NCBI GenBank assembly: GCA_048013815.1 | Contig: CM106585.1 | Span: forward strand, 24,157,963-24,221,962 | Reading direction: 5' to 3' | Length of the DNA: 64,000 nt | From: Setoptus koraiensis | Taxonomy: Eukaryota > Animalia > Arthropoda | Shown here: one piece after another, positions 1,385 to 64,000 of the stretch | Layout of the letters: the number at the start of each line of letters is the position of its first letter | Numbering within the stretch: position 1 is the first letter of the stretch | The notes under the pieces: generated by a model | Told to the model about the DNA's origin: nothing | The model's input: the letters and a program-made list of their open reading frames with translations, nothing else | Databases searched by the model: none | Made by a program: the position numbers and the translations under genes

Positions 1385-1421
<37 letters not shown>

Positions 1422-3922: not shown

Positions 3923-6350
3923 CTTGTTGTCGTGCGTTATTTATAATGTTAACTTGATGATTATCACTTCTCGCACTTTATCTCACTATGAGTTATAACA
4001 TTGAGATGATGATCAAATCAACAACAAATATTTCGTGTGCGCGAGTGAGTGTTGTAACTACAAACACTTTAAACCAATTTTAATTTTTCTTTGACACACA
4101 AGAACAAAGAAGAGGAACAAACAAATTCTTGTAATGTAATGTGCTGGTAATTTGTTGTAATGTGTTGTTATTCGTGTATGTGTGTTTGTTTCTCTCTGAC
4201 AAACAAAAACTTCCTATTCAATCCAATCCAATGCAGTCCAATTTAATCTAACCTAACTTTGCGCTCTTTTCGTCCATGTTACTGCCGCTATAAACGCGCT
4301 GGCTCACCTCATCTCATCTTGTTTTTCTGATATAAATTGAGATTAAGCGCATCACTTGAAATATTTGACTCTTAAACTGCGTGTGCACCGACTACTAAGC
4401 TACTCCAATCGCACGTAAATAAACATCAAGTATTCTGATTATTATGATGCTGACTAGAGTTCTCTCGCCTCAGCTCAAACAGCCGCGCTAATGGATAAAA
4501 TAATGGCAATAGCACGAGGTCGTCCCCATCGAGCAAAGTCAAAGTTGAGTTTGCAGCATCAGCCTCGATGCTGTGACTGATGCCGCTGAACTGGCTGGTT
4601 GAACATGTGTATATAGTCAATATAGTCGATATATCTTGCAAACGCAATGCGATATGTAACCGTAGAGACGGGGAGACAGGGACAGACAGCAGTAGAGAGT
4701 GATGAAGAATGGAGGCCCAACTAGGAAGTGAATAGCGTCATGGCGCAAAGCCAAATATCTTGCCCTCTCTGTCTCGCTGAGCTTACTGACTCAACCTCAT
4801 AAATATACCGCAATAATGCTATGTAAAAATAACTGATTTAGCAATAGTTCACCGAGCGACAACAATATCTATGCACCACAACTAAACTCAACTATATAAT
4901 ACACAATATGACTGAGTTTAAATTGTGATTGCATCAACAATAAACGCTGCCGATCATCATTGTGATAACGTTTGCAAACATCATGTGAGTCCCTTGATCT
5001 ATGTGCAATCATAGCGTTTGGTCCATTCTATGCGTCGGCTCTCTTCCACTCATGGGTTTGTTATACTGAGGCCAACGCCATCCTTGGCTCACAGCCAAGG
5101 TGGCTGAACTAGACTATGAAGTGTAAACAAAATGTTTGATAATTTGACGCGTTACAGGAAGAAAAATCAGCAGCGAAGTACAATACGAGCGAAAGGAAAA
5201 ATTAAAGGAAGCGTCAAATCAACAAGAACAATATTCAATATGCATGATTAATAAAAATAAACTAGAGGGCTGACACTCAAATAGACCAATTAACACTTGT
5301 ACGGACATGTTGCAAAAATAAAACTCATTTCAACTCAATTCGGTTCCTCAATCCTCTTAGTGTTTCCCTTTTAAATTCCCGTAGTGTGCGACAGAAAGAG
5401 GGAGGAGGCAACCCCGCTACTACAACTGGGATTCGCTATCCTTCCAGTTTTTTTATATTCTTTGAATTTTTCTGGGTAGCTTGTCTCAGCCAAACGATGA
5501 CCGATCGTCAAATTAACACCATCCATCCAAAGCGTAATTTCATGCGTATGAGCGAACGCATGGCCGAGGTGCATTCTTTCTCTATTTCATCTATTATATT
5601 CTTATCCATCCTATCGGTGACAATAAACAGTAAAGACAAAAAAAGAGATATGACGGTCGATAATGTATGTCGAGTGTAGTTTGGAAGTAAATGTCGAGAT
5701 GTTAATGCTGTGGAGGATCAAGATCTTGAATTTTATCAGATGCAAGAATTCTTGGATAAAACGATCGATATCGATATAATATTAGATGTTAAGCCATTGT
5801 GCAACACGTGTTTTGGGTCACATGGCCCCCGAGAAAATACAGCATAGTATCAAATAAAAAAATCTCATTACATACGTGACGCACTTCTCTATTTCAGATA
5901 GAAAGTCAAATGATGAGAGACCACATGTATCAAACAATAAAACTCACTCTCACTCAACAGAACCCATCGATTTTTCACTTTTGAATAACTCAATTAAATT
6001 CACGAATTTCATTTCCACTGAATTGAAAGGCTTGGAGTTAGACTTGACTGAATAGGACGGTTAGGACTCAAGGCCGAAATGCTCCATCTTTCGGCAAAGG
6101 TGGCCAAGATACAAGATATCTGTGGATTTATAGTGAATTCTTTGATAAACTAGTTCAGGCAAGGTTTTAAATAGCGACCCCATCTATTTCTTTGATACTT
6201 TACTGCCGAATAGTGCATACATCTTTAAATTACATTCCTAAGAACGCTAAGGCGAGCTGCAGGAGTTACTTGACTAGGAAACAGCCGGTTAGATTTTGCC
6301 ACTTGTTCTTCTTGTACACCCTCGATGATCCAATAAGAGATGTCAACTCA

Positions 6351-12218: not shown

Positions 12219-13487
12219 TTAGCTTGTCCTTAATTGATAGTCGCCATTCTGCGTTATATAGCGCACCCATGGCAACGCCTGGTAGCCACTTTTTTCTATG
12301 ATCTTCAAATATCTTACTTGGATGCCTGATGTGGTGAAATAAGGTATTTCAAATCTCACTTGGATGGGTGGCTTTCCCTCTGTTTCGTCACTCTCTATAC
12401 TAGGCAATTTGAAATGAGCCCTCATGAGATACTCTTTACCACCTGGAAATGACTTGATTGTCCAGATTATGGCCGACGTCTCTGGAGCGTATCTACACGA
12501 GCCGATTCCTGCCTTAAAATTTGGGGAATCGGCATCTTGTGGAACAGGTATAATTATTTCAACGCCATTTGCTGTTGATCGGCGCTTGAATTGGCTTTTA
12601 GCTTTTACCATATATTCTATCCGGCTATGTGCATGCTTTTCAATTTGTGACTCAATCCAAATCAATGGTTTTATATGTGTGCTTAAACGATATGACATCA
12701 ATTCAAATGTACCATCTGGCGGTATGAATGATATTGTTCTGTCGTTTTCAAAACGTGACAATCTAACACACTGATGAAATTTAACATCTTCTAATTCAAC
12801 TGATTTTGATTTACCTCTTCCAGTCGATTCAAATAACACTTTATCATTGAGACCTAACCTCAACTCTGGCATACCACTCAAATAGACACGCATTTGTATG
12901 GAGCCCACTATTTCGGAACGTAATACATTACCACTGGCGTTGGCCAGAAGATTAACTGACTCAATGACATCTAGAAAGACTTCATTTTTTCTGTATTTGA
13001 TACCCTGAGAACGCCAAGAGACGGCATTGGTCACTGCCTCGGGCGGCCTAACTTGCATTTCCATTATTTGCGATTCTTGTGTAATATATTCTTGCAATAT
13101 CTTCCATTCAGTTGTCTGAGGGTAACCGAAGTCCATAACTTCATCTAGTAGCTCATATATAAGTACAAAATTATCTCTTATAGATTCTTCCTCTAGTTCT
13201 TTAAAATATTCAGTGAACACTTGAGCACAACGATGCAAGAATTGAAATACTAATGTAACATTGGCGTTTTTTGTAGTTGTAGCAACTAGATATAAATTAT
13301 TGCACTTGATGAATAAGAAGCTAACATTTTGATGGCGTAATATTGGGCAAAGGCAGGCCTCATCCTCTCGCTCGCTTAATATAGGCATAAATTTATCAAT
13401 TATATTTAGATCTACATCGCCACGATAATTTCTCGAAATGAGAACTTTACCTTTAAGATCTAATATATAGACTGCTGATGCAGACAT
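12219..13487 (-). CDS. AP1M1: AP-1 complex subunit mu-1, intronless, 422 aa
   Basis: MSASAVYILDLKGKVLISRNYRGD start, EEESIRDNFVLIYELLDEVMDFGYPQTT, NEVFLDVIE, YLSGMPELRLGLNDK, ALPWVRYITQNGDYQLR end. Confidence 0.96.
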   Translation of the reverse strand: MSASAVYILDLKGKVLISRNYRGDVDLNIIDKFMPILSEREDEACLCPILRHQNVSFLFIKCNNLYLVATTTKNANVTLVFQFLHRCAQVFTEYFKELEEESIRDNFVLIYELLDEVMDFGYPQTTEWKILQEYITQESQIMEMQVRPPEAVTNAVSWRSQGIKYRKNEVFLDVIESVNLLANASGNVLRSEIVGSIQMRVYLSGMPELRLGLNDKVLFESTGRGKSKSVELEDVKFHQCVRLSRFENDRTISFIPPDGTFELMSYRLSTHIKPLIWIESQIEKHAHSRIEYMVKAKSQFKRRSTANGVEIIIPVPQDADSPNFKAGIGSCRYAPETSAIIWTIKSFPGGKEYLMRAHFKLPSIESDETEGKPPIQVRFEIPYFTTSGIQVRYLKIIEKSGYQALPWVRYITQNGDYQLRTS

Positions 13488-14137
13488 GTTGGCTCCTTGT
13501 TGTTGTAGTTGATTAATATGCCGCTCACTTTCGTTCTAATATTCCTCTGGCTAAAATATCAATCGGATCCTTGTGAGCCAACAGTATATCTAGTATAATA
13601 ATAATTTAATTTAATAGTATAATAATAATAAAATCCAGGCAAATGGATGGGACGGTGTCTAAAGGTGTCCGCTAATATATTTGCAAATGAACTGAAAAGG
13701 CTACGCTAGCTTCCACAGTGTCTGTTCCATGCGGCGTATTTTGACTTTTTGTGCAAATTTACCAAACACAAGGCTACACAATGAGCGCACAGTGTGCGTT
13801 GTCAGAATTAAACTTATAGCGGACAGAATAGAGTACCTAATTTCATTGCACTCATCTTAAATGTAAGTGCATGATGATTGGTTTTATGTCATTAGTGAGA
13901 CACTATCATTAATGTCACAATTTCTAGTACAATTTCTAGTACTATCTATCTTGATCTATCTCGGATTATCTTTAGGTTAAAATGCTCCAATATGAGAGGA
14001 GCATTACCTTGTTTCTCTTTCTTCCAGCATTAGATCTATACTATTAATTCAGAGCGGTATCAAATCCTTTAATTAACACATTTCTTCCATATCATCCATT
14101 CAATAAAGTCGAAATTCGAGTCGCCTCTATTCTAAAA

Positions 14138-19387: not shown

Positions 19388-19709
19388 AGGTGCATGCTGT
19401 CACTAAACATAGATGATCTGTCTTGTGTCCATTTACCAGATGTGGTTGCGTAAAAATTCCTATGTCTTTTTCAACAGCATACGATGATCACGCCAATGAA
19501 TGACGCACTGGCACAAATTCTGTAGTCACTTGCGTTCTCCAAGTTAGAGAGGCTGTGTATCAAGGCTTTGAAAATGGACGTTCGCTCGCACCCGGCATCT
19601 TTCTTCTTTCCCTCTTTCCCCTATTTGACGCATGCGCAAAGCTACTGCTTCGAACTGTTGTTGTTGAATCCAGGCTGAAGTTCAGCCGCTGAACACACGT
19701 GAAACTTCA

Positions 19710-19778
19710 GGAACATTCTAGAAGGAGTGAGCGCACATCTGAAAAAGTTCGCGAAAGTTCCTCGCTCACGATATATAC
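19710..19778 (+). promoter_or_regulatory. Hsp70 proximal promoter: two heat-shock elements and a TATA box
   Basis: GAACATTCTAGAA (19711-19723) and TTCGCGAAAGTTC (19748-19760) are three-unit nGAAn arrays. GATATATAC at 19770-19778, about 170 nt before the Hsp70 ATG. Confidence 0.85.
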
Positions 19779-19945
19779 TTCTTCATCTGCTTGATTTTCT
19801 CATATTCACAAAATACAGTAAATCCAATCGTCTAAACCAATCTAGTTCTAAAATTGCAAAATATAATCCAAAGTAAAAAAGTCTAGGAAACTGAAACTAA
19901 ACATTACGCTACATCACTTCTGCAGTAATATAAATAACTTCTAAA

Positions 19946-21904
19946 ATGTCTACAAACGCCATTGGTATCGATTTGGGAACCACATACTCATGTGTCGGAG
20001 TTTTTCAACATGGTAAAGTCGAGATCATCGCCAACGATCAAGGTAACCGTACAACACCGAGTTATGTAGGTTTCACCGATTCCGAGCGTCTAATTGGTGA
20101 CGCTGCCAAAAATCAAGTAGCTATGAATCCTCAAAATACAGTCTTCGACGCTAAACGTCTCATTGGTCGTCGCTTCGATGATGCTACCGTTCAATCCGAC
20201 ATGAAATTGTGGCCGTTCACAGTAATCAATGACAACACAAAACCCAAAATTCAAGTCGAATTTAAGGGTGAGACAAAATCCTTCTTCCCGGAAGAAATTT
20301 CATCGATGGTGCTGACCAAGATGCGCGAAACTGCCGAGGCTTACCTAGGAAAGAAAGTCACAAATGCAGTCATCACAGTTCCAGCATATTTCAACGACTC
20401 GCAACGTCAAGCCACCAAAGATGCTGGTGCAATTGCTGGTATGAATGTTATGAGAATCATCAATGAGCCCACTGCTGCAGCTATTGCATATGGATTGGAC
20501 AAGAAGGGAGGCAAAGAAAAGAACATTTTAATTTTTGACCTTGGTGGTGGAACATTCGATGTGTCAGTGTTGTCCATTGACGATGGTGTGTTTGAGGTGA
20601 AAGCAACCGCTGGAGATACTCACTTGGGTGGTGAGGACTTCGACAACAGAATGGTGAATCACTTTGTACAAGAATTCAAACGAAAACACAAGAAAGATAT
20701 TACAGGTAACAAGAGAGCCGTTCGTCGTTTGAGGACAGCCTGTGAACGAGCCAAGAGAACATTGTCATCATCTACTCAAGCTAGTATTGAAATTGATTCA
20801 CTATTTGAGGGTATCGACTTTTACTCAAACATCACCCGTGCTAGATTCGAGGAATTGTGCGCTGATTTGTTCCGATCAACTCTAGACCCAGTCGAGAAAT
20901 CTCTTCGTGATGCAAAGATTGATAAAGCCAGTATCCAAGAGATCGTCTTGGTCGGAGGTTCTACTCGTATCCCAAAGGTTCAAAAGCTTTTACAAGATTT
21001 CTTCAACGGAAAAGAACTCAACAAGAGTATCAATCCAGATGAGGCCGTAGCCTATGGTGCCGCAGTACAAGCAGCCATTCTTAGCGGTGACAAATCTGAG
21101 GCTGTACAAGATCTGCTACTTTTGGATGTTACACCACTATCACTTGGTATTGAAACTGCTGGTGGAGTGATGACGACATTAATCAAAAGAAATGCAACTA
21201 TTCCAACTAAGCACTCACAGATATTCACAACATACAGCGACAACCAACCTGGTGTGTTGATTCAAGTGTATGAAGGAGAGCGTGCTATGACCCGCGACAA
21301 CAATATGTTGGGCAAATTCGAACTATCTGGAATCCCACCGGCACCAAGAGGAGTTCCACAAGTTGAAGTGACATTCGATATAGACGCCAACGGTATCTTG
21401 AATGTATCTGCTGTTGACAAGAGCACAGGTAAACAAAACAAGATAACCATTACCAATGATAAGGGTCGCCTATCTAAAGAAGATATTGAGCGCATGGTAC
21501 AAGAAGCAGAGAAATTCAAAGAGGATGACGAGAAACAAAAGGATCGTATCAAAGCCAAGAATGATCTTGAGTCGTTTGCATTTAACCTAAAACAAACGTG
21601 TGAGGATGAAAAGCTCAAAGACAAGATACCTGCAGAAGACCGTAAGAGTTTAGAGGAGAAAGTGAAAGAAACATTGGCCTGGTTAGATGCAAATCAAATG
21701 GCTGAAGCTGAAGAATTCGCTCATCATCAGAAAGAATTAGAGCAACTCTCAGCTCCCATCATGACCAAGATGTACCAAGCTGCAGGTGGACCAGGTGGTG
21801 CCGGAGGTTTCCCAGGTGCAGGTGGATTCCCCGGTGCTGGTGGCGAGGCTGGAGCAGCAGGTGCTGGAGCCAAGAGCGGTCCCACAATCGAAGAGGTAGA
21901 TTAA
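19946..21904 (+). CDS. Hsp70: Cytosolic Hsp70 family chaperone, intronless, 652 aa
   Basis: [36 protein letters not shown] signatures; GGFP repeats; C-terminal GPTIEEVD. Confidence 0.97.
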
Positions 21905-22606: not shown

Positions 22607-25600
22607 CTACAATATTGGGCTTGTGGGTGGTGCTGTCTTCTTTATAGGATGAACACGACACACACAACCGGCCGGAAATTTAAATAATGCTACTTGAGGG
22701 CTTCTTGATGGATCATGTGGGTCGATAGCTATCATTCTATGAAGACTGTATCGTTGTTGGCACGTTGAATCATAAAAGGGGGCGATAAACTCGCATGGCG
22801 TATTAGGTTGTCTATTAATAAGGTTAAGATAAAGAGCAGAGATGATTACGAAAATCAGTGTCCGGTTGATTAATGATTGATTCAAGAAACATCTATTCCT
22901 ATGCCCGTTTGGCTAGCTATATGTATCGATCAAGTATACTTACGCGCAGCTCTCAGTTCTAACTTTCTGAGGGAATACGTCAGTGTTAACCACCAGCATC
23001 CACTCTCTGGTGATTTCGTCTTTGGCCCAACCAGGCCTCATAACATCCACTTGCGTCTGGCAAGCAAATTTGCCTCTGGCTGCCTGGTTGTTAGTTGTGT
23101 TGAAGTCATCTTTGTGAAGCTCCTGGTCTGAGACAGTCTGCAATTCTTCGTACATTATTCTCACTGATCTGAAACTTTTCTCAACCGCTTGTCTGACTTC
23201 ATTCCTGATTAATTAATGTAAAAGAGATAAAAAAGAGGCATCAATAAAATCATAATTACAACAAGTTAAAACAGAACCAAAAGAATAAAAAAAATCGCCC
23301 CTTACATAGGATAGTCTTTCGTGAGGACACAAAAGTTCTTGCCGGTCAATGTACAATTTGGCACCTGACCATTGGCTAAAGGTTGGTCGGGCCTCCTGAT
23401 TGTAACACTTGGCCCGTGCTCGAATGTGGGCACCGAAATGGAGTTTTGTTTCTCGTCACTGGACAATTGTTGTTGTTGGTTGTTGATATTGTTGTTGGCA
23501 CCTTGTTGTGATTGTTGTTGCTGCTGTTGTTGCATATCAATACGAACTGGGTCTCGTTCTGGGCCGCCGGATAGCTGGGATCCGTCGGAGCTGTCGGCGT
23601 TAGTTGATATGGTTGCAATTCTCATTCCTGGCTGCTGTTGCCTGTTACTCTGTTGCATTATTTGCACTTGACCCTGGCTATTTATCATCATAGCCGCCGG
23701 ACGACCAAACGGAACAGGTTGATTTGTTAACACTGTCATTCTATTTGCACCACCAAACTGTCTAATGGCATTATTTTGCATCATTGGTGGCATCATCGGT
23801 TGCGATTCCATTTGAGCCATTAATTGATTGCTGAGTTGTAAACGTTCGCGTTGATTTTGTTTACTAGCAACGGATCTCTGTTCTGTCATGGACATGGGTG
23901 TTGGTTGAGACGATGTTTTGGACCTACTGAAATCTGTCCTTAAACGCGTTGGTATAAATGAGTATTGCTGCTGCTGCAGAGTCTTACTCTTTCTGCCACC
24001 CTTGACTTGTCTATTGGTCTCTATAATGGAGTTGTTGCCCGAGGCAATTGGCTGCTGTTGTTCAATCATGTTGAGTTGCTTCTTTGGCTGATTGGTATTA
24101 ATTGAAACAGGTGTCACTGTTACAAAATCGCCAACAGTGGTAGTGCTAACGGTTATATTACTTGTAGCAACTAAGCCTGCCATATTATTGTTGTTGTCCA
24201 GTTCATTTTGTTGTTTTGTTACTATTGTGGCCGTTGTGGTGGTTGTCGGTCTATCTGTTGCTTGTTGTGATAGCTTGATAGTTGATAATTGCTGTTGCTC
24301 ACTAGATTGTGTTTGGCTTTTAGTTGGCTGAGTAGTAATAGAATTAGTAGTAGTTGTAGTAATAGTTGTGGGCTTCATAGTGGTGGTAGTGGTAGTTTGT
24401 TGTTGCTCATTAACAATTTCATTATTGTCTAAATTCATAGCCGACACTAGGGGCTGTTGTGTTGTTGTCAACATTTGTCTGCCTGATGTCGTTGACATGA
24501 TAGTTGATGACATTTGTTTATTAATATTGGGTAACATTGTCACTGAGCTAGCTGAATTGCCTGTTGTAGAAACAGAGTTGCCTGATGTTGCCTGTGTAAT
24601 TGGTGAAGTTGTAGTTGTTGTTTGCCTGTTGTTGGCGGCCGCGCTTGTTGTTGCAGTTGCCATGATGGTGGTCATTGGTTGTCTACCTTTAATCTGTTGC
24701 TGCTGGGTCATGCCTCTGGCGAGTATCATCTGATCTGGTTGAGTTGATGCAGTGTTCGTTTGGGTAAACTGTACAAATTTAGTTGTTGGTGGCTCGCTAG
24801 CCGTTGTTGACTGTGTTCGCTGAACTGTCTTACTTGTGGTCATTGGAGCAAAAGTTGTCATTTGTGTTTGTTGTTGTTGTGATTGTTGATTGATGTGCAT
24901 AATCAATGGTGACATTATGTCATTTTCACTAGCACCTGTCATAGCGATCATAGATGATGGTTGCTGATTTGCTGCCGATATTTGCCCCTGTGACGATGAT
25001 CTATCCATCATCTTCTTACCTATGGTGGCCGGTCTCAATTTCATGCCTGGACTTGTCAGTTGTGATGCTGTTGTCTTAGCACCTGCATTGCTTGTTTTGG
25101 CTTGCGGTGATTGCAGGTTGTTGTTTGTATTTGCGGTGGAGGTCTTAGTTGACGACATGATTGCCGGTTGTCTCATAGATTGCATAGATGCTTTCTGCAT
25201 GAATTGTTGTTGTTGTTGTTGTTGCTGCTGCTGCTGCTGTTGTGGCATAGATTGAGTTGACATTGATTGCATAGCTGGCGTGCCAATGACAGTTGTAGTG
25301 GTCATCTGAGGACTGTTGTTTGTCATTGTCATCAGCTGAATCGCCGGAAATTGTTGACCACTTGCCGTTGATTGCTTCATCGCTTGTCGCATTATAATGG
25401 GACCTTGAGATGTCATGATAACTGTTTGATCGTTTGATCCAAACGATTGCTGTCGACCATTTTGTGTTTGTGTGCCACTGTCACCGCCGCTCATAGGTGA
25501 TCGTGTTGGTGGAGGTGGTTGCAATTTACGTTGTGGCCTACGTGTTGTTGTTGATACTATTGCCGATACGGTTGTTACACTTTCAGGCTCACCACCAATT

Positions 25601-28600
25601 GTCTGCTGCTGTTGTCTATTACTATTGTTTACATTTGTGCCAGTAGAGGGATTTGTGGTTGTGGTGAAGGGGGCTCCAGTTGTTGTGATGCTGGCGTTTG
25701 AGTCGTCTGAGGTGATAGTTATCGACTTGGCTGTAGTTCGCATCATTTGTTGTGTCAGACCATTATTGTCATTGATTTGTTGGCCATTATTGTCTTGAGT
25801 GGACATTGTCATGCCAACCACTGACTGATTGTTGTCTTTATTTCTAGTTCCGCTGTCACCAGTTGTCGTTGATACTCCCATTTCATTTGTCAGCATAGTC
25901 ATCATTGGATTGAACGTCGTTGTTGTTGTTGTTGGTGCTGGTCTTAGTTTGTTTTGTGTTGGTGTCTTGGTGCTCATAGAGCCCATTTCGCTTGTTGTTG
26001 GCGCTTGAATTCTGGGTATATCATTGTCCATCATAATAGTTTCCATCATGTTGTTGAACTGTTGTTGTTGCTGCTCTCTCGACATCATCATCATGTCGCT
26101 GTTGGTCATCATTGATCTAGAGGGCGATTGAATGGTTGTTGGCTTCTGCACGCGTGCAATATCCTCCGTTACCATCATGTTCAATGTTTGTGTTTGTGTT
26201 GTTTGCGGTGACGTTGTTGAGACGCTAGTTGTTTGTTGTTGATTATTTGTCACTGATAGCCTATCTGAGTTATCATTATTGGCCATATCAACATTGTTGC
26301 TATTGTCGTTATTTTGTTGCTCACTATTGTTGTTGTTGTTGTTGTTGTTGTTGCTGTTGACATTGCTAGTGTTGTCCATCAAGTCCATCATGAGCATCAT
26401 CATGTTGTTGTCGTTATTATCCAAAATTGTTGTACTTGGAGCCATAGTACTGGCCGGTGTTGAGCCAACACTTTGCTGTTGTCTCATTGCCTCATTTGAA
26501 TTATCTTCGTTTGTATTCATTACATTGGTGGTCGTCATCATGTCGGCCCCCATGATGCCATTGTCATTGTCATTGTTATTGTTATCATTTTGGCCCAAAT
26601 TAGATTGAGTGCTCATTTGATCAGACGTTACACCTTGTTGTGTTGACACATTCATTGGCATATTATCTTCGGAACTGTCATCATTGTCATCATTTTCACT
26701 ATTCATATTTTCTTCTTTTGTCAATTCGGGCGGAATTCCGTCACTCTCTGTAGTTGTTGTAAACCCACTAGCGTCATCATTACCTTGATTAGCTTGGTCA
26801 CCGCCATTGGTCATCATTGACTTTGTGGTGCTTGAGCCATCATTGGCCATCATAGCTGTTGTTGTTGTTGTTGCTACTACTTTTGTTGTTCTAGATATAT
26901 CTTCGCCCTGCATGTCAATTTGACCATTATCGCCATCCTCATTAGAGCCTCTAGAATTGCCACTGTCGTCACTATTACTAGTGGTACTTGTTTTCATTGT
27001 TGTTGTTGGCATCTGTTGTTGAATATTAATCATTTCGAAATCAGTTGTTTGAGTTGAGCTAGCCATTGTTGACGCAGATGTCGATGATGTTGTTGCAGGC
27101 GTAGTTGTTGTTGCTGCTATCGGCGTTGTTAATATTTCTCCCGAAGCATTAGTGACACTATTGCTATCGAAATTAGTAGCCCTACTAGCACTGGTACTCG
27201 AAACAGTGGGTTGTGATGTAGCACCGGAAGTTGTTGTTGTTGTTGTTGTCTGGGTTGGTGTGTTCGATGTGACCAATCGCTCCAAGTTCATTTGCATAGT
27301 TGATGCTTGCTGTTGTTTAGTTGAGCCAGGTCTCGTATTTGTATTAGCGTTCGTCATGATTGTTTTTGTTGTGGGAGCCATTGTTGTTGTTTGCATAATT
27401 CGTGCGATCGTTGTCGGTGTTGTCGAGTCACCTCTGTCAGAAGTTGCCGGTGTCGTTGTTGTTGGTATTGGCTTGAATTGGGACATCATAGTGATCATGT
27501 TTCGCATAGTTGGTCGTCCATTAACCAAATCAACTCTCTGCTGTTGATTATTGTTGTTAATTGTTTTTGTGGTTATTCTCTGCTGATCGGAATCCGTTCT
27601 TGTTATTGGAGTCTCTTGATTTAAGTCAACTTGCTGCTGGCCACTTTTGGTCTGACCATTGACATTTGTCGTCATAGTTGTTGCTTGTTGCTGTCGAATT
27701 GTTTGTGCCGGTGCTGTTGCTGTCGTCATTGTTGTTGTCGTTGTTGTTGTCATGGGCCTAAAAGAATTCGAAGTCACTTTTGTTGCAACATTTGACAATC
27801 CTGTGGTTGTTGTTGCTGTTGTCGGCATTGTTGGTCTAATAGTAGCAGCTGTAGTAGTTCTGAATTGTTGCTGCCCATTACTTGTTGTCATCATGTTTGT
27901 TCTACTAGTTGTTGGATTAGACGTAGTTGTTGTGGGGGCCAGTGTGGCCATTGTAGATTGTTGTTTAACACCACCAGCACTATTAGCACGTACTGTTTGT
28001 TGTTGTTGTTGTTGCGTCATCATAGTGGGACCAAAAGTTGTTGTTGTTGTGGTCTGTTGCTGCTGCTGTTGTTGTTGTTGATTTTGATTAGGTGTTGATG
28101 GTGTGCTCATGTCCTGATCAGTTGTTGGCACAATAGTGCTCATTGTCTTTCCATCCTGGCGTTGTTGCTGTTGTTGTTGTTGTTGTTGCTGTTGCTGAGC
28201 TGAATCCATACCTGTCGAACCTGTTGCTACACTCTGAATGGTGGGGCTTGTTGTTGGTGCACGCATATCAATTAGATTACTATTTGTCATCGATTGCTGC
28301 TGCGGTTGCTTTTTGCTCGTTGCCATCATTGTCGATGGCCCCGTGATTGAGGCTGCATCCATTTTGGTGAGAATCATCATTTGAGTTACATCCGCTTCTT
28401 TGTTGGTTCTGCCAGCTTCTGTCTGTTGCAACTTGATGTTATTGTCCATGGAATCGTTGTTGATAGAGTTGTTGTTGTTGCTGTTGTTGTCCTCCTCTTC
28501 TATGTAGTCCATTTGATGTTGTTGTTCTATTCTATCCTCGTTATCTGATATCTGATTCTCTCTCATTTGACTGATGGAGAATGCAACAGGTTGCAATCTA

Positions 28601-30072
28601 GAATCAACTTCATTCGACGCCAATGATTGTCTGGCAAGTTTGTTGTCACGCTGATTTGCGCCACTTGCAGGGGCACTTGTAGCAGAATTCATTGAGCTGC
28701 TTACTGGACGAACTCTCATTCCTGGCAAAATCTGATTAAATTGTTGTTGATCTCTCTGATTAGCCAATTGATTGTTGACTGTGAATTGATTGTTGTTATT
28801 AGCGACAACACGATTGCTCTTGGTAACCATTGGCATTTGTGATTGTTGCTGTTGCGAATTGACCATATCAAATCTAGAGCTAGCTGTTTGCTTGCCCATT
28901 GGTTGTTGTTGATTGAAAGTTGTCTTATTTTTGGCCCTTTGCATCATAGTTCTCATTTGTATGCCCATTTGGCTGCTGTTATCCTGTTGCTGCTGTAGAT
29001 TGTCTTGTTCTCCCATAGAATCAACATCATTGGTAGCTTGTTGCTGTTCAGCATTATTAGCTTGCCTATTTGGTCTACCTTGTTCTTGTATCAAATTTGA
29101 ATTTAAATTATTTGTCGTTCTTTTGTTGGTGCTTGTTTGTTCGCGGTCAGAAGTTGGCTTAGTTTTGGTCCGTTCTAACTCTATGTTGTTGTTGTTGTTG
29201 TTGTTGTTATTATCATTATTATTGTTGTCGTTGTTGTTACGATAATTATTGTTGTTATTATTATTATTATTATCAATGATATTTAAATTTTGATTATTAT
29301 TAGCTTGCTGTTGTTGGGTTTGCTGTAGCTGTAGCTGTGGCAGTGATTGTGGTTGCTTTATTGCAACCGCTGTAATCGCTGGTGATGATTGCATTGTCAC
29401 CATCCCATTAGCTGTTAGTGTTTTGCCGCCAAATGACACAGCCTTAATTGGCCTAATTGTAGGCTCAACAGCCTCATTGATATACTCTGTTGTTGTTAGT
29501 TTTGGTTTAGACCAATTAATACAATAGATTGGATAGCGTAGGCGCAAGGATTATAATGGGTTGGGATATCAACAGGTAGAATGGTTCGGTTGTTTGTGGG
29601 TTAGTTGTCAGATGAGATGGGTTAGTGACAGTTGGCGAGAGGTTGGTTTGTTGGTTTAATTTGTGCGGCAAGCAAAATTGAGTTTTCGTTAATTAGCTCA
29701 TGTGTAAGATAGTTGAGTAGAGAGAAAGCAATAAGTCATGATTAAGTTTGAGATAAACAGATTCACAGTTTACAAGAGCAAAGAAGCAAATGCAAATTTA
29801 TATGCAAATTTTTGTTAACATTGACATCATTAATCAACAAGGCGGTTACACACTAAGCTGTTATGTGCTGCTGTTTTGGTTTGGGTCATTTAATACTTAC
29901 GTTGCCACCAGAGATTCCACCAATTATTGTTATCTTGATTGTTGTTTATTTGTATCATTTCCTGTTGACGGCTTGGCGCCTGACGCTTCGAATGGTGCAA
30001 AGTGGATTGGGCACCGATGGTCACCAGAGCCATCACCAGCAGGCCACTGACAATAACGAGCTGCCACAGAAG
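22607..30072 (-). CDS. Spaetzle/neurotrophin-family cystine-knot precursor (NT1/spz2-like), at least 2272 aa; exons 29901-30072, 23306-29486, 22944-23204, 22607-22811; start codon not located
   Basis: C-terminal FACQTQVDVMRPGWAK...WMLVVNT...QKVRTESC..PNTPC...STCQQRYSLHRMIAID...FKFPAGCVCRV is a Spz cystine knot, preceded by NCTLTGKNFCVLTKDYP. GT-AG introns 23205-23305 and 22812-22943 keep the frame. The upstream exon encodes a signal-like LLWQLVIVSGLLVMALVTIGAQS and joins in phase 1. The two 5' exon boundaries are less certain than the 3' ones. Confidence 0.8.
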
Positions 30073-58008: not shown

Positions 58009-61000
58009 TCAGATACCGTAACCTAAGTAGCTAGTGTTGCCATTAGATCCTAGCATTCCAGGGGCTCCTGTTAGCATTAGAGGGGTGTCAGCGGAAACAT
58101 TTTTTTCCTTGTTTTCCTCCAACTTGACTTCAACGGCATCTTTGAGCTCGTCTATTTTTGTTCTCATCTCATACATGGTCTGAATCATATATGGCATTGC
58201 GAAATCCATAATGTTGTGCCTCCAGGCCAATTCCAAGACCACATCGGGGTGTATTAGATCATAACATTGAAATAAACACGCTGCGAAACAGGCATGCTTC
58301 TTATCCTCAAGGAACCATGATAAAAGCTCTTCCGCTAGTTCGGGCATCCTTGAATCCGCTGCATATTCCATGGCATCTTTGTAGAGACCATCTTTTTTAC
58401 ACAACTCAACTGATTGTTTCCAACGATTATTACTCTTGTATAGGTATGCTGCAATTCGTCTGAACTCTATGAGTTCGTGCTTCTCGAGGCGCTGTGCCAG
58501 GGCGATTGTATCAAAGTTGTCAAAAGCATCGATTGACGTACGCAAACCTTGGAAATCCTCCTCTGCAATTAATAAATCATTAAGCGCTTCGTTGATAGCT
58601 TTATTGTTCAGATTTTGAACTGATCTGAGATACGATTTGACCAGTGGAAGGTGATTGGTCTATTTTTGTTTGATGTGAAAGAGAGATTGAGATGTATTAA
58701 GAACTGTTCAAGTTCAAGGGTATGAAATAGAGAAGTAAAGCTAATTGTACTTACTTTGTTGAAGAAAGTTACAGCTCGTGTGTGATCCATTCTCGGGGCT
58801 AGAACCAAGAGAAGATCGTTCAATAACATTGGTTTGTAATCTAGATAGAATTGGAGGGCTTTGAAATATAATTCAATATTGGCAACCTTAGTAATCATTT
58901 CTTTGAAATGTCCTTCTCTCCAAGCCTCCGAGGGATGGTTTATCATAGTTAAAACAGCATTATCATATTCCTCATACTTGTCATAGAGGAAAACTAGCTC
59001 GCCCCACAAATGGGCCTGTTCAGCAGCACGCAAGACTTTTGGAATGTTCACGCGGGACCAGAATAACTCCAAATGTTCTTTCATCTTGTTGGGCTTATAT
59101 TTGGAATAAAGTATAGCCAACTCTGTGAACATTCCCATGTGGGCCCTCTCTAACCCTAGAGCCGCCTCGAGCAGGCTTATCAGTTCTTCGTAATATCCTC
59201 GCTCCTGATAATAGTTTATCAAATCCTCCAACTCATCAGCGTGAACAACAATATGGGTACCACACATTAATGCTAATCTGAATTCCATGTTATCAACGCA
59301 AGCGAAGCAAACCTGTGTTATTGTGAAGATGTTTAGAGATTGTAGAAAATATCGAGTTAGGGGGCTGGGCTGAGATAATAGATGAAAGATTGTTGCTAGG
59401 AGTTCACTTTGTCTCACCTCTTTCCATGTCTTGGTCGAATTAGCTTTGCGGGCCGAATCAACTGCGCCTTGGAATTCTTTCAAGTGGACCAAAGTGATTG
59501 CAAGACGACCAAAGTTGGATACGTTGTTGTAAAGCAACTTGGCGGCTTCATACAAACCATCATCGAAACATCTATCGCCTATCTTTGATATGTCAGCATG
59601 GTTGGGGCTTGATATGAATTCTTCGAGATCTGCCAGACGACCAGTTTTAGCGTAGGCATATATGAGCTCAGACTCAATAGAAGACTCTCGAGCTTTTTTA
59701 CGTGCCATTTGCAAATAACGAACAAGATCTTCCCAGCTACCCTGCTCATGGGCAGTGGCCACAACATCCATGTAAGAGGCGGGATCTCCGGCCTTAATGA
59801 ATGAGTCTATCGCTTCTTTGAAAAGTCCTTCACTTAACTGCGCCTTTGCTAAGAGACTCCAAACCGCTGGCTCATTACAGCGCTCTGCGAATTCATAGGC
59901 CCTATCTAGATTTTTAATATTTTCGATTAAAACTTGAACGGCGGATGTGTTGACATCAAATTTTTTGAAAATGGCGAAGGCTTCTTCGAACAGCTCTGAA
60001 GCTATGGCGATGTTGGCTATATCAGGCGCATCATAATTGTCTAGTCTGTTGATATATTCCATTACACGGGTCTTATCGGCTTTAATCGCAGTGAGAATAA
60101 GCAAATTTTGCAGGTTTCGGTGATCGGCAAACACTGAATTGTCCAAAACTATCTTTTCAAGAAGCTCGATGAGCTCATTTGGCAGCTCAGCTTGCATGAA
60201 GGCTTTAACTGCGACTGATACATCCTCCGGGTCTTGTGTTTCTGATAATGCAGTCTGAACAACTTGGTCTATTAATTGGCGTCTGAATGGATTGGTATCC
60301 AAAAGTACTTGAGCCCAGAGTTCGGGATCTCTCCTTTTAACAAGGTACCTTGCCTCACTCTTGAAAAGGGAGTTTTCATTGCAGACATTGATAAGCTCAG
60401 TGTCGCATTGGCCGCGCTCATATGCTACACATGCAAGATGAGGGTCTCGTTTTTCACAGTATTTTCCGACAACTTTACTATCATAACATTGGTTTTCTTT
60501 CAGAAATCTTTCAGGGTTGTTGTTGGAATCAATGTAGATCTTCGCAAGTGCATTGTGTGTCGCTGGCTCGACACTGCCCTCTAATACTCGCATTTCCAGC
60601 CATGGTAATAGTAACTTCAACCGGTTTCGCTTTTCCACTTCTTCTACTAGTTCCTCCGTTAGAAACTGTCCCCTCACAACGTTAATGAGTTGCTTGATTG
60701 CATCTTCTGAACAGTCTACATCCAATAGACCGCCAACAACAATTGGCAAGCGTGAAGGATTGACCTTTTGAACGTAAATTTCGATGTACTTTTGCAGATT
60801 ATTTCTAAATAGATACAAGACTAAATCGTGAACAAAGTCAAATCGATCACATACAATTATAAGTGGCAACTGATCCGTCAACTTGGCTTCTTTGAGAAAA
60901 TTCTTAACACGTTCGGCGTTATAGCAGTTACTCTCACGGCAGATACGTTCAACTTCCTTCAACTGACCAGTTTTACAAGCTGCCTGAATGTATTTGAAAT

Positions 61001-63212
61001 GAACTTCCGCATCTTGACTGAAGTTGACAATAGAACCCAAAAAGTAGAATAAGCCTTCATATGACTTGAATGACTCGAAGAGGTCTATGAGCGAGTTCGT
61101 AGAGAGTTGTTCGTGATATTTAGTGGCGATTTGCACACATATCTGTAGATTTTGACGAATGTTAGATGTCAACATCGCTTTGAGACATTCCAGAGAGTCT
61201 TCAACGGATAAACTGCCGAAAAAGGTTACCAACCATTCTGGATTAAGCACCTGAGTGTGAACAATAGCTCGTTTTATATCGTAGAGATCATTGTAGTGCT
61301 CCAAAGCTCGCTGAAGTAAACCCGCCTTCTCGCACATCTGAGCAATAGTTGGCCTGTCATAATGAGTGAACATTTGGTTACCTAAAATAGCATCGGCAAC
61401 CTGTGGAGCTGTGGCCAAGTTCATCTCAAGCAAGCGAGTTTGGAGGGGACCTTCCTCTGGTAAGTTTTTCTTTAGAGCGTCTAGAAGAAAAGATGTGCAT
61501 GGTTGAACTAAATTCTGTTCCATAAAAACATCTACGATCTGATTGATTTCAGCCAGAGGTTCTTCTTCGGAGACCAACATTTGAGCAAATGCTGCTCCCT
61601 TTTCGGGGTTTGTTCGCATCACTTGACGGAGTAAGTTAATATAGTCCGGAGTGTAGCCAGCTTTCTTGGCGTAGAGTACAATTTTCTGGAATTGTCCTGT
61701 CTCGGCGAAACATTGAATGACTTTACTTGGAACGTTAGCACGAAGGTAGACAGAGAGCGCGAGTGTTGGGTCCAAGGCCTTTGATAGATCACCTAGTTCC
61801 TCACTGCACTCCAACTTATCATCTTTGAGCCATTTTTCTAGAAGTTGTTTGCGTCCTTGTTGCATCACCGGACGACAGAGCTCAAGTGATTCGAATTTGT
61901 TCAATTGCCCTTGATCCAAAAGAATGCCAAAGTATTGCAAGAGAGGGGATGTCTGACCAGTTGTGGTTGGCACTTGCTGGAATTTTTGAATGGTCTGAGG
62001 GGTTCTTAAAATACCCTTAGGAGCGTTGGCCGCTATCTTGGCTGCCTCTATGTATTGACCGTTATTGAATAGAACGTTGAATCTCCTAACAAATAAATCT
62101 TCGGCTCCAGGTAGGTTACACCTAGCTGCCAATCTAAGAGCAAGATCTGGATTTGCAAGAGTTGAAGTTATGTATGCTACTATGTTGTTCTCATCGACTG
62201 ATACTGAAAGAACTTGACCTTTTTTGTTAACGCCAACAATTCCACTGGTGGCCTCGTGCTGAGCCGTGACGAATATGGTGTCTGCAGATATCCTATTCAT
62301 GTAGATACACGCCCCTGATTCTATGTCGTATAGATGAACGTAGCCATATTTAGTTATCAAATAAACAACGCTGTACTTGGAAGATATCTGCATCGAAACA
62401 GGAAAATCAGTAGGAGCTTCGGGTGGGAAGAAAACGTCAACGGCTTTTTTAGCATATGGTTGATTTCCTGTGGCTGGCTGGCCGACTTCTATAATGTGCA
62501 GCTTTCCTGCCTGCTGTGATCTATTGGCAAAGCAAAAGAGAGTTGAAAGCTCAGAATTTCCTTCGCACTTGAATTGAGTGAAAGCCGCTGCGTGGCCCTC
62601 AATTGGTTGAGATACCTTTCTATCAACAGAATAAAGCTGCATGGCTCCCGCTACACGATTATCTTTAGCTGATATACCAATAAGAAGAAGCCACTTAAGA
62701 GAGTGATCAGTGCGATAATTGATGATCTGGCAACCACTCAGAGAGTTGTGCCTATCAAAGACCTTCAAAGGCTGAGATTCACCTTCCATGCTCCAATGAT
62801 AGACAGCAGCCTCGGTGACCAAAGCAATAGTATTAACGTTAATCCATTTCCAAAAGACTACATCTTCGGGCATTGCGTGAGCCTTCATTTTACTCTTCAT
62901 CTCAATATTGAAAATCTGTAGAGTGCGCGCAGCCTTTAGTGCGATAACTTTAGAGGTAGGATTCATGATGGCCGAATCGGCTGATATTGGGCGCCTTATG
63001 GGTTGCTGTGGATTTGCCATATCTATAATGACTACTTGTGCTGATTCCCCAACTTTTTCTCGGATGCAGATAAATTTATCTGATTCCATGGTAAGCGAGT
63101 TAAAGCTTATGTTAACAGTGTTGATGCCAATTCCCGTAAGCTGAAGCAGCTCCTGGAACCTTATGGGCAGAGCCGCTGTTCCGGGGTCTATACCGATGGC
63201 GGTTGTAGACAT
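58009..63212 (-). CDS. Chc: Clathrin heavy chain, 3 exons (59418-63212, 58755-59312, 58009-58659), 1667 aa, with an Hsp70-like 12-aa N-terminus
   Basis: LPIRFQE..., [28 protein letters not shown] repeats, [25 protein letters not shown] introns 59313-59417 (105 nt) and 58660-58754 (95 nt) restore KTWKE|VCFAC and FFNK|[15 protein letters not shown]. Confidence 0.96.
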
Positions 63213-63323
63213 TTTAATTATAAATTATTAATAATGTAATATTTATGTACTATAAGATAAGAATAATATATTATTTTAATATGGGTGTATAATTATAATA
63301 TTGATACGGTATTTCTAGTGATG

Positions 63324-63354
<31 letters not shown>

Positions 63355-63550
63355 GGATACTGGTGATAGATTAAACGTTACTGGTTGCATGTGAATTCTT
63401 AGAATGGTAGGTGGTAAAATAAATTTATATATCGGCACAGAATGTAGTGCGCAGCGACGAAAGAATTGGAACAGAGTAGGCACAGAACAAACAAGTGAGC
63501 ATTTTGGGCGCGCAGCAGTCAAATAAATCGATGGGTGTAATTTTTCTAAC

Positions 63551-63601
63551 AGAACTTTCCTGAATTTTTCAGTTGTGCCCTTACTCTTCTCGAATATTCT
63601 A
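63551..63601 (-). promoter_or_regulatory. Inverted, diverged copy of the Hsp70 double-HSE module upstream of Chc
   Basis: Minus strand AGAATATTCGAGAAGAGTAAGGGCACAACTGAAAAATTCAGGAAAGTTCT aligns 41/52 to the Hsp70 module; both three-unit HSEs are intact. CGATATATAAA (TATA) at 63434-63424. Confidence 0.8.
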
Positions 63602-63630
63602 GGAGCGTGGAATGCTCGAATCTCCTCTAG

Positions 63631-64000
63631 CAATGGAATGACGCACCACGGCTGTATCAAGGCTTTGAAAATGGACGTTCGCTCGCAGCCGGTATCTTTC
63701 TTCTTTCCCCTTTTCCCCTATTTGACGCATGCGCAAAACTACTGCTTCGAACTGTTGTTGAATCCAGGCTGAAGTTCAGTCGCTGAACACACGTGAAACT
63801 TCAGGAACATTCTAGAAGGAGTGAGCGCACATCTGAAAAAGTTCGCGAAAGTTCCTCGCTCACGATATATACATGTACTTCTTCATCGGATTTATCCACA
63901 TAAATTTTCAAAATACAACAAATCTAATCGACTAAATCAATCTAGTTCTAAAATTGCAAAATATAATCCAAAGTAAAAAAGTCTAGGAAACTGAAACTAA
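63631..64000 (+). promoter_or_regulatory. Second copy of the Hsp70 promoter and 5' UTR; predicts another Hsp70 ATG about 46 nt past the window end
   Basis: Direct duplicate of 19494-19900, including identical 92-bp (63781-63872 = 19687-19778) and 63-bp (63938-64000 = 19838-19900) blocks. Confidence 0.9.

What the first reader, a model, noticed from the sequence alone, without database searches (positions are those of the whole stretch)
63177..63601. Clathrin heavy chain appears to have captured an Hsp70 5' end (HSEs, TATA, start and first 12 codons)
Seen in sequence: (1) Chc begins ATG TCT ACA ACC GCC ATC GGT ATA GAC CCC GGA ACA ([12 protein letters not shown]) and Hsp70 at 19946 begins ATG TCT ACA AAC GCC ATT GGT ATC GAT TTG GGA ACC ([12 protein letters not shown]): 10/12 aa and 28/36 nt, both preceded by TAAA. 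The peptide is joined via AA to LPIRFQE, and there is no other Met before that motif. (2) On the Chc strand, 63600-63551 aligns 41/52 to the Hsp70 HSE module, including the spacer between the HSEs (AGT.AG.GCACA.CTGAAAAA). This argues for homology rather than motif convergence. The GAA/TTC cores are kept and the within-HSE mismatches sit at 'n' positions. (3) The TATA word CGATATATA is shared, but lies ~115 bp further from the HSEs than in Hsp70; faint 5' UTR patches (ATTCACA..CAGTAA..AATC..ACCA) also match. Established: animal CHC normally starts M-x2-4-LPIRFQE; IDLGT is part of the Hsp70 phosphate-1 loop; Hsc70 is the clathrin-uncoating ATPase. Inference: one arm of an old inverted Hsp70 pair was fused to Chc, so this essential gene may be HSF-responsive and carry an Hsp70-derived N-terminal tag. 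I know of no such chimera.
Basis: partly seen in the sequence, partly recalled or inferred. Interest (0 to 1): 0.88.

Follow-up and report, generated by a model that had tools for sequence, protein, structure and literature searches.

The report
Clathrin gene with Hsp70-derived start
In this tiny-genome (eriophyoid-type) mite, the essential clathrin heavy chain gene sits head-to-head with a second Hsp70 gene and carries two Hsp70-derived pieces, a mirrored heat-shock-element module and the first 12 codons; a related species has both, but whether they make clathrin heat-inducible is untested.

Summary
The core observation is real. Chc (minus strand, ATG at 63212) begins [12 protein letters not shown]. 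That is 10/12 aa and 32/40 nt identical to the Hsp70-1 start; the next best of 128,000 positions is 24/40. The block at 63600-63551 is an inverted copy of the Hsp70 two-HSE module (score 28 against 12±1.4 in shuffles).

New here:
- The other arm is a live second Hsp70 promoter at 63652-64000 (+), with its CDS beyond the window.
- An independent contig from a related species (4-fold-site divergence 0.42) has the same head-to-head layout. It has the same Chc-side HSE block (95% identical, against 50-68% around it) and a shortened tag, MSGTIDPGAAA. So this is old, not a misassembly, and the HSE block is under selection.
- Eight other eriophyoid-like Chc genes inspected (six genomic contigs, one metagenome contig pair) have short native starts. 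The six genomic contigs have no HSE upstream, and none shows an Hsp70 neighbour in the upstream sequence available.

The "captured 5' end" is not demonstrably contiguous. Homology stops right after HSE2. The 5' UTR shows no Hsp70 similarity and instead carries the (AUU)n tract typical of native Chc UTRs.

Heat inducibility and any function of the tag remain inference.

The parts
63177..63212 (-). Chc start codon plus 11 codons ([12 protein letters not shown]), derived from the Hsp70 start
   Evidence: 10/12 aa and 28/36 nt identical to 19946-19981. With the preceding TAAA the match is 32/40, against a next best of 24/40 in the window. The related contig L001 has the shortened form MSGTIDPG.
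63171..63176 (-). Two Ala codons joining the tag to LPIRFQE
   Evidence: Read directly. L001 has three Ala codons here. Origin unknown.
58611..63170 (-). Body of clathrin heavy chain, first exon from LPIRFQE onward
   Evidence: ORF list. It is 75-87% identical over the first 300 aa to named clathrin heavy chains carrying Clathrin_propel and Clathrin repeat Pfam domains.
58009..58545 (-). Last Chc exon, after one short intron
   Evidence: ORF list. L001 shows the same split, with genes called at 891-5282 and 5377-5979, both hitting PF00637.
63213..63405 (-). Inferred Chc 5' UTR, with an (ATT)n tract at 63324-63354; probably native to Chc
   Evidence: No similarity to the Hsp70 UTR. A sense (ATT)n tract is also present upstream of native Chc starts in L002, L003 and L005, and in degenerate form in L001, L006 and L007. 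This tile is the best or second-best of 1160 window tiles against four native UTRs. The TSS itself is inferred, not observed.
63424..63434 (-). TATA box of the Chc side (CGATATATAAA)
   Evidence: TATATAAATT is conserved in L001. I saw no comparable TATA in the upstream sequence of L003 and L006.
63435..63529 (-). Block of unknown origin between HSE2' and the TATA
   Evidence: 64% identical to L001. No similarity to Hsp70 promoters or to native Chc upstream regions.
63530..63605 (-). Chc-side heat-shock module: HSE1' 63587-63599, spacer, HSE2' 63552-63564, plus 20 conserved bases. It is an inverted paralogue of the Hsp70 proximal module.
   Evidence: Score 28 against 12±1.4 in shuffles. It aligns only in inverted orientation: 28-36 inverted, 12 direct. 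It is 72/76 identical to L001, while neutral sites differ by 42%. It shares derived states with the L001 Chc side.
63652..64000 (+). Promoter and 5' UTR of a second Hsp70 copy (Hsp70-2): HSEs 63795-63817 and 63842-63854, TATA 63863-63871. Its CDS starts about 46 nt beyond the window end.
   Evidence: A near-identical alignment to 19556-19900, score 552. L001 begins with the reverse complement of ATGTCTACAAA at the corresponding place.
19556..21904 (+). Hsp70-1: promoter (HSEs 19701-19723 and 19748-19760, TATA 19769-19777), 5' UTR, and CDS 19946-21904. This is the comparison copy, at the ancestral locus.
   Evidence: PF00012 with E = 3e-264. HSEs. Synteny with L008/L009: an Hsp70 followed by a large convergent gene.

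Best explanation
In an ancestor shared with the L001 species, a duplicate of the lineage's cytosolic Hsp70 (Hsp70-2) came to lie head-to-head with clathrin heavy chain, about 835 nt between the two start codons. Two Hsp70 pieces were then copied onto the Chc side in inverted orientation.

Piece 1 is the upstream activating region. In the window this is HSE1, spacer and HSE2. In L001 the CT-rich and CATGCGCA elements are copied as well.

Piece 2 is a patch of about 40 nt holding the start codon and the next 11 codons. It replaces the short native M-A-x-T-N start in frame.

Between the two pieces lie a TATA/initiator region of unknown origin and a 5' UTR that looks native to Chc. The result is therefore a mosaic. 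It arose either from one complex template-switching event or from two events, and is less likely to be a single contiguous captured 5' end.

Shown: the homology, its orientation, its age, and strong purifying selection on the Chc-side HSE block.

Inferred: HSF binds this block and drives, or boosts, Chc transcription from the TATA 120-170 nt downstream. The intergenic region would then be a bidirectional heat-shock promoter. Also inferred: the 12-residue tag is translated (there is no alternative start) but is a tolerated, weakly constrained N-terminal extension rather than a working Hsp70 part.
For: Homology statistics.

Inverted orientation only.

Second Hsp70 promoter as the partner arm.

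Same architecture in an independent contig of a related species. There the arm homology extends further upstream (z = 7.6-12).

The Chc-side modules of the two species share derived states, so they are orthologous.

Selection: the HSE block is 95% identical between species, against 50-68% in the flanks and 42% difference at 4-fold sites.

Translation of the tag: L001 has no AG between the ATG and the LPIRF codons, and both species have in-frame stops just upstream. The IDPG codons differ only synonymously between the species.

Relatives with native starts: six genomic contigs have no HSE upstream of Chc, and none shows an Hsp70 neighbour within the upstream sequence available. In L003 the upstream neighbour is OST48; most of the others have only 183-817 nt upstream. 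None of the listed Chc proteins inspected or the eight of the 80 metagenome loci translated carries the tag, apart from P0001.

Mosaic: homology ends right after HSE2. The UTR is unlike Hsp70 and like native Chc UTRs.
Against: There is no transcript evidence.

The 'native UTR' argument rests largely on an (ATT)n-rich tract. With the repeat removed, the flanks show no significant similarity. At least one other gene in the window (AP-mu) also has such a tract upstream, so convergence is possible.

The shared CGATATATA word and the TATA being specific to this lineage fit a contiguous capture.

The HSE block could serve Hsp70-2 alone: relatives' Hsp70 promoters have distal HSE modules about 190 nt upstream of the proximal one.

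The tag differs by a 3-codon indel and two replacements between the two species, so its constraint is weak. The excess of matches at codon positions 1+2 over position 3 gives only P = 0.06.
Confidence: 0.7

Rival explanations
1. Contiguous capture followed by turnover. One inverted partial duplicate of Hsp70-2, running from the upstream region through the TATA and 5' UTR to codon 12, was fused in frame to Chc. The first reader's version is the same with an old second Hsp70 gene whose body was deleted. The 340 nt between HSE2 and the ATG later lost all similarity through insertions, substitutions and new (ATT)n growth.
For: A single event is simpler, and the two homologous blocks are collinear and in the same orientation. 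CGATATATA is shared with both Hsp70 TATAs. A TATA box is present in the window and L001, and I saw none in the native Chc upstream regions of L003 and L006. Hsp70 5' UTRs themselves are only about 64% alignable between the two species, so loss of UTR similarity is expected. The UTR similarity to native Chc UTRs disappears once the repeat is masked.
Against: Homology ends abruptly after HSE2. The next 20 bases are fully conserved between species yet unlike the Hsp70 sequence there. The TATA sits 115-170 nt too far downstream. The sense (ATT)n tract matches native Chc UTRs in several relatives, and this tile ranks first or second of 1160. Relatives show single, unpaired Hsp70 genes.
Confidence: 0.35
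2. The Chc-side HSE block works only as a distal enhancer of Hsp70-2. HSEs act in either orientation, so the block's conservation would reflect Hsp70 regulation, and Chc would not be heat-inducible.
For: The block lies about 200-300 nt upstream of the Hsp70-2 proximal HSEs and TATA. Related Hsp70 promoters (L008, L009) carry a distal HSE pair about 190 nt upstream of the proximal one.
Against: The block is closer to the Chc TATA (120-170 nt) than to the Hsp70-2 TATA in both species. Hsp70-1 has no such distal block. The block does not align to the distal module of relatives (scores 8-11). The conserved stretch runs 20 nt past HSE2 towards Chc. None of this excludes the rival.
Confidence: 0.35
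3. The tag is not part of the protein: an unseen upstream exon supplies a native start that is spliced onto LPIRFQE, or translation starts elsewhere.
For: The window sequence has AG dinucleotides at two places inside the tag, one just before the Ala-Ala codons. No transcript was seen.
Against: L001 has no AG anywhere between its ATG and the Leu codon of LPIRF. There is no other Met, and both species have in-frame stops 2-6 codons upstream. The ATG and reading frame are conserved, and the IDPG codons differ only by synonymous changes. The genome is nearly intron-free in this gene.
Confidence: 0.05
4. Assembly artefact or chance resemblance.
For: None found.
Against: An independent assembly of another species has the same junctions. 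Three runs from three studies hold 96-97% of the sampled words of 62400-64000, although two of them may be one data set filed twice. The shuffle and scan statistics exclude chance.
Confidence: 0.02

Closest known systems
Head-to-head heat-shock gene pairs sharing an HSE-bearing intergenic region (Drosophila Hsp70Aa/Ab at 87A, C. elegans hsp-16 pairs, human HSPD1/HSPE1). Recalled from established knowledge, not tested here.
   Same: Two mirrored HSE arrays sit in a short intergenic region of about 0.8 kb between divergently transcribed genes. Each array is next to its own TATA box.
   Different: One partner here is not a chaperone but the essential coat protein clathrin heavy chain. Its arm holds only the upstream activating module, followed much later by 12 codons, rather than a full promoter copy.
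Chimeric genes made by partial duplication of a neighbour that supplies a new promoter and N-terminus (Drosophila Sdic from AnnX and Cdic; jingwei). From established knowledge.
   Same: A neighbouring gene's regulatory sequence and first codons are joined in frame to another gene, and the arrangement is kept in related species.
   Different: Those cases create a new extra gene copy. Here the only visible copy of an essential housekeeping gene was itself modified. The donated coding part is only 12 codons with no domain, and the donated pieces are separated by apparently native sequence.
Short templated insertions and template-switch rearrangements (polymerase-theta end joining; MMBIR/FoSTeS). 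From established knowledge; offered as a mechanism only.
   Same: Short patches copied from a nearby donor, often in inverted orientation, and several patches from one donor in a single event.
   Different: No junction microhomology or intermediate state was observed here, so the mechanism is inference.
Ordinary animal clathrin heavy chain N-termini
   Same: The LPIRFQE propeller start and everything downstream are conventional.
   Different: Most other sequences inspected begin M-x(3-6)-LPI[RK]F; a few run to 10 residues. The eriophyoid-like relatives have MATATN, MASTN, MAATNTG or MATQSQV. Only this gene and P0001 carry an Hsp70-like extension.

Membership tests
Clathrin heavy chain | N-terminal propeller starting at LPIRFQE, followed by clathrin heavy-chain repeats, with high identity to named CHC | tested here: met
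   75-87% identity over the first 300 aa to named CHCs. The nearest relative, P0001 (99%), carries PF01394, PF09268, PF13838 and PF00637.
Hsp70 family (for the Chc product) | Complete nucleotide-binding and substrate-binding domains (PF00012) | tested here: not met
   Only 12 codons match. Similarity to Hsp70 ends after codon 12. The phosphate-1 loop Leu is replaced by Pro in both species.
Hsp70 family (for the donor, Hsp70-1) | Full-length PF00012 match and the cytosolic EEVD end | tested here: met
   PF00012 with E = 3e-264 over residues 5-611. Relatives end in GPTIEEVD and share the M[S/A/T][10 protein letters not shown] start.
HSF-regulated (heat-shock) promoter | At least three contiguous alternating nGAAn units | tested here: met
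   Two perfect three-unit HSEs lie on the Chc side, at 63587-63599 and 63552-63564. Such sites occur only at three promoter regions in 64 kb.
HSF-regulated (heat-shock) promoter | HSEs within a few hundred bp of the core promoter they serve | tested here: inconclusive
   The HSEs lie 120-170 nt upstream of a conserved TATA on the Chc strand. The TSS was not observed, and the same HSEs are also within reach of Hsp70-2.
HSF-regulated (heat-shock) promoter | HSF binding and heat-induced transcription | not testable with these tools
Chimeric gene by partial duplication | Identifiable donor, in-frame junction, and retention in a related species | tested here: met
   The donor is the eriophyoid-type Hsp70. 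The ORF is in frame. The chimera is present in L001 despite 42% divergence at 4-fold sites.
Chimeric gene by partial duplication | The chimeric transcript and protein are expressed | not testable with these tools
   No reads were laid. Support is indirect only: no alternative start, and the frame is conserved.
Inverted Hsp70 gene pair (87A type) | Two complete Hsp70 genes head to head | tested here: not met
   The Chc-side arm has no Hsp70 body. Relatives L008 and L009-L011 have one unpaired Hsp70, and Hsp70-1 in the window is unpaired.

The most novel reading that the evidence does not exclude
Clathrin heavy chain and a cytosolic Hsp70 of the Hsc70-like clade are co-regulated from one bidirectional, HSF-responsive promoter in this mite lineage. 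Hsc70 is the family that uncoats clathrin cages. In this reading the Hsp70-derived N-terminal peptide of clathrin is itself maintained by selection for a function such as translation control or chaperone interaction, rather than merely tolerated.
Probability: 0.12. Interest if true: 0.8.

Novelty: new variant of a known kind. Interest (0 to 1): 0.58.

Why it matters
Essential housekeeping genes rarely have their promoter and start codon rebuilt from a neighbour. Here the sole visible copy of clathrin heavy chain acquired a stress-gene activating module and a foreign N-terminus, and kept both across a deep species split. If the HSEs do drive Chc, a core trafficking gene has been wired into the heat-shock regulon next to a chaperone of the family that uncoats clathrin. 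That would be a clean natural example of regulatory capture by local inverted copying in an extremely streamlined genome. If they do not, it remains a well-dated example of how short templated patches can change a coding start without harm.

Tried and rejected
Read evidence. After that, no letters of 62877-62912 were sent to any search tool. Later queries used 62928-63212, 63150-64000 or other genes, and the divergence script skipped those codons.

Searches that found nothing useful:
- Exact look-up of the Hsp70-1 protein, tried to reach beyond the window end: not on record.
- Metagenome scan with the conserved 31-mer of the Chc-side module: no hit.
- Metagenome scan with Chc residues 1-95: 80 loci, none close. 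None of the eight I translated has the tag.
- Rfam on 63150-64000: only a sub-threshold chance hit.
- Papers: the two eriophyoid genome papers do not mention clathrin or Hsp70. No paper was found linking HSEs to clathrin heavy chain.

Ideas tested and rejected:
- Similarity of the block 63551-63395 to native Chc upstream regions or to Hsp70 promoters: none.
- That the Chc-side module is the orthologue of the distal HSE module seen in relatives' Hsp70 promoters.
- The bacterial-type promoter/terminator scan is irrelevant for this eukaryote.
Full report
**What is at the coordinates**

Read on the minus strand, 63212 downward, the sequence gives ATG followed by [12 protein letters not shown], two Ala codons, then LPIRFQE and a conventional clathrin heavy chain. 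The ORF runs 58611-63212, with a last exon at 58009-58545. In-frame stop codons lie 5-6 codons upstream of the ATG, and there is no other Met before LPIRFQE. Over its first 300 residues the protein is 75-87% identical to named clathrin heavy chains. The comparison gene at 19946-21904 is a full Hsp70 (PF00012, E = 3e-264).

**Is the resemblance more than chance?**

Yes, for two blocks.
- *The start.* The 40 bases TAAA + ATG + 33 of Hsp70-1 match the Chc start at 32/40. An ungapped scan of both strands of the whole window finds nothing else above 24/40. The binomial P for 25/33 matches after the ATG is 4e-9.
- *The HSE module.* 63600-63551(-) aligns to 19711-19760 with 41 matches in 50 columns. 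The score is 28, against 12.0±1.4 (maximum 17) in 500 dinucleotide shuffles. Perfect three-unit HSEs occur at only three places in the window: the Hsp70-1 promoter, a second Hsp70 promoter, and the Chc side. That is 10 pattern hits against 0.6-0.7 expected.

Two smaller points of the finding do not hold.
- The interval from TATA to ATG shows no similarity to the Hsp70 5' UTR (10 against 11.5±1.6). The 115 nt between HSE2 and the TATA match nothing in the Hsp70 promoter.
- The word CGATATATA is indeed shared by all three TATA boxes and occurs nowhere else in the window. The related species does not keep it on the Chc side, so it is weak evidence.

The plus strand from 63652 to the window end is a near-identical copy of the Hsp70-1 promoter and 5' UTR, matching 19556-19900. 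A second Hsp70 gene, Hsp70-2, therefore starts about 46 nt past the window end and is transcribed away from Chc. The Chc-side HSE block is the mirror image of this live promoter's HSE block. It aligns to the Hsp70 module only in inverted orientation, scoring 28-36 inverted against 12 direct.

**Evidence from a related species**

The closest Chc in the protein collection is P0001, 99% identical over 300 aa. It begins [18 protein letters not shown]. Its contig L001 comes from an independent sequencing run and is genomic. It starts with the reverse complement of ATGTCTACAAA, which is an Hsp70 start, and then has the same layout as the window: Hsp70 promoter, centre, Chc-side HSE block, TATA, AT-rich UTR, and tagged Chc.

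The two species differ at 42% of 4-fold degenerate sites in Chc, about 0.63 substitutions per site. Four conclusions follow.
1. The structure is not an assembly artefact. Three runs from three studies also hold 96-97% of the sampled words of 62400-64000, although two may be one data set filed twice.
2. It predates the split of the two species. The Chc-side modules share derived states that distinguish them from all three Hsp70 modules, and both tags share the Leu-to-Pro change.
3. The Chc-side HSE block is under strong purifying selection. It is 72/76 (95%) identical between species. The rest of the intergenic region is 50-68% identical, and Hsp70-2's own TATA+HSE block is 88%.
4. In L001 the homology of the Chc-side arm with the Hsp70 promoter runs further upstream, through a CT-rich stretch and a CATGCGCA element (z = 7.6 against the window's Hsp70-1, z = 12 against its own Hsp70 arm). 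The intergenic region is thus an inverted repeat with a centre of about 60 nt.

**Is the tag translated?**

No transcript could be examined. From then on I sent nothing from those places to any search.

Indirect evidence favours translation.
- L001 has no AG dinucleotide between its ATG and the Leu codon, so no splice acceptor could bypass the tag.
- Both species have in-frame stops just upstream of the ATG.
- The ATG and frame are conserved, and the four IDPG codons differ only by synonymous changes.

Constraint on the peptide itself is weak. The two species differ by a three-codon indel (AIG) and two replacements. Against Hsp70-1, matches at codon positions 1+2 are 19/22 and at position 3 are 6/11, which gives only P = 0.06.

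**Relatives with normal starts**

Other eriophyoid-like Chc genes begin with a short native start before LPIRFQELL.

| Start | Locus or loci |
|---|---|
| MATATN | L003, L006 |
| MAANQG | L004 |
| MASTN | L005 |
| MAATNTG | L007 |
| MATQSQV | Fragariocoptes, L002 |
| MAATPG | metagenome L012/L013 |

- None of the six genomic contigs (L002-L007) has a perfect HSE upstream of Chc. None shows an Hsp70 next to it in the sequence available.
- In L003 the divergent neighbour is OST48. Most of the others carry only 183-817 nt upstream.
- The HSEs and the tag are therefore derived features that go together.
- The Hsp70 relatives of this clade start M[S/A/T][10 protein letters not shown], whereas other mites have [12 protein letters not shown]. 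The tag thus carries the clade-specific form of the donor.
- In L008 and L009-L011 the Hsp70 is single and unpaired. It lies between DHX37 and a large convergent gene, like Hsp70-1 and the 2081-aa ORF in the window.
- Hsp70-1 is therefore the ancestral locus and Hsp70-2 next to Chc is the derived copy. Nothing supports an old inverted Hsp70 gene pair.

**Contiguous capture or mosaic?**

Homology with Hsp70 stops immediately after HSE2. Hsp70 has its TATA 11 nt further on. The Chc side instead has 20 bases that are fully conserved between species but unrelated to Hsp70, and its TATA lies 115 nt (window) or about 170 nt (L001) further downstream.

The 5' UTR carries a sense (ATT)n tract at 63324-63354.
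- Such tracts are rare: six of four or more units in 64 kb, counting both strands.
- They nonetheless occur upstream of the native Chc starts of L002, L003 and L005, and in degenerate form in L001, L006 and L007.
- When native Chc upstream regions are scored against 1160 tiles of the window, the Chc UTR tile ranks first or second for L003, L006, L005 and L002. The Hsp70-1 UTR scores at background.

This suggests the UTR is native, and that the two Hsp70 patches flank native sequence.

The case is not closed.
- With the repeat masked, the flanks show no significant similarity.
- The AP-mu gene in this window also has such a tract upstream.
- The lineage-specific TATA with the shared 9-mer fits a contiguous capture.

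I put the mosaic reading somewhat ahead of contiguous capture with later turnover. Both agree on the main point: Hsp70-derived activating module, Hsp70-derived start.

**How it most likely works**

Shown: two canonical, selected HSEs lie 120-170 nt upstream of a conserved TATA on the Chc strand, in mirror symmetry with the HSEs of Hsp70-2.

Inferred: HSF bound there activates the Chc core promoter, possibly alongside Hsp70-2, which would make the region a bidirectional heat-shock promoter.

The main functional rival is that the block serves only Hsp70-2 as a distal enhancer. Relatives' Hsp70 promoters do have distal HSE pairs. However, the block does not align with them, is nearer to the Chc TATA, and is absent from Hsp70-1. 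Only expression data can decide.

The tag holds just the first strand and part of the phosphate-1 loop of Hsp70, with the loop Leu changed to Pro. It cannot act as an Hsp70 domain, and is most simply a tolerated N-terminal extension of the propeller.

**Comparison with what is known**

The layout resembles the divergent heat-shock gene pairs of flies, worms and mammals. It also resembles chimeric genes such as Sdic, which took a promoter and N-terminus from a neighbour (both from established knowledge). It differs in three ways:
- The recipient is the only visible copy of an essential non-chaperone gene.
- Only 12 codons were donated.
- The donated pieces are separated by apparently native sequence.

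Searches of the paper library found no report of HSE-driven clathrin heavy chain or of such a chimera.

**Verdict**

This is a real, old and partly selected Hsp70-to-Chc transfer. I class it as a new variant of a known kind (chimeric gene / regulatory capture by local inverted copying). The functional claims are still untested.

Noticed in passing
window 63652-64000 (+): Promoter and 5' UTR of a second Hsp70 copy, near-identical to 19556-19900. It has a 6-nt insertion at the TATA and a more diverged stretch just downstream. Its CDS lies beyond the window end.
   Followed up: yes
window 12222-13487 (-) and 13619-13631: A clathrin-adaptor medium (mu) subunit gene lies 45 kb from Chc. It too has an (ATT)n tract in sense orientation about 130 nt upstream of its start, like Chc. 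(AUU)n tracts may be a recurrent 5' UTR feature in this genome.
   Followed up: partly
window 23305-29547 (-): A 2081-aa ORF with no Pfam match and very strong strand composition bias (AT skew -0.38, GC skew +0.2). It sits convergent to Hsp70-1, where relatives L009-L011 have a 1812-aa gene with a Spaetzle domain.
   Followed up: no
window 29600-58000: About 28 kb without any ORF over 140 aa, in an otherwise tightly packed, nearly intron-free genome. Either a gene of many small exons or a large non-coding stretch.
   Followed up: no
L008 7535-7785; L009 7538-7790: In related mites the single Hsp70 has a proximal four-unit HSE at the TATA and a distal two-HSE module about 190 nt upstream. The window's proximal two-HSE module aligns weakly (score 14) to that distal module, which hints at promoter remodelling within the clade.
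   Followed up: partly
L001 380-525 compared with window 63606-63651: The Chc-side arm of the related species keeps the CT-rich and CATGCGCA elements of the Hsp70 promoter, which the window's Chc side lacks. The two L001 arms are also more alike (49/54) than the window's arms (41/50). This could reflect lineage-specific loss or conversion between arms.
   Followed up: partly
Nothing was laid, and the place was avoided in all later searches.
   Followed up: no
runs X4-X6 and X8-X16 (organism C): Runs under a third organism label hold 27-30% of the sampled words of 62400-64000, and many 2026 RNA-seq runs carry the same label. They may be a close relative or host material carrying mites. They are the obvious place to look for transcripts.
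   Followed up: no
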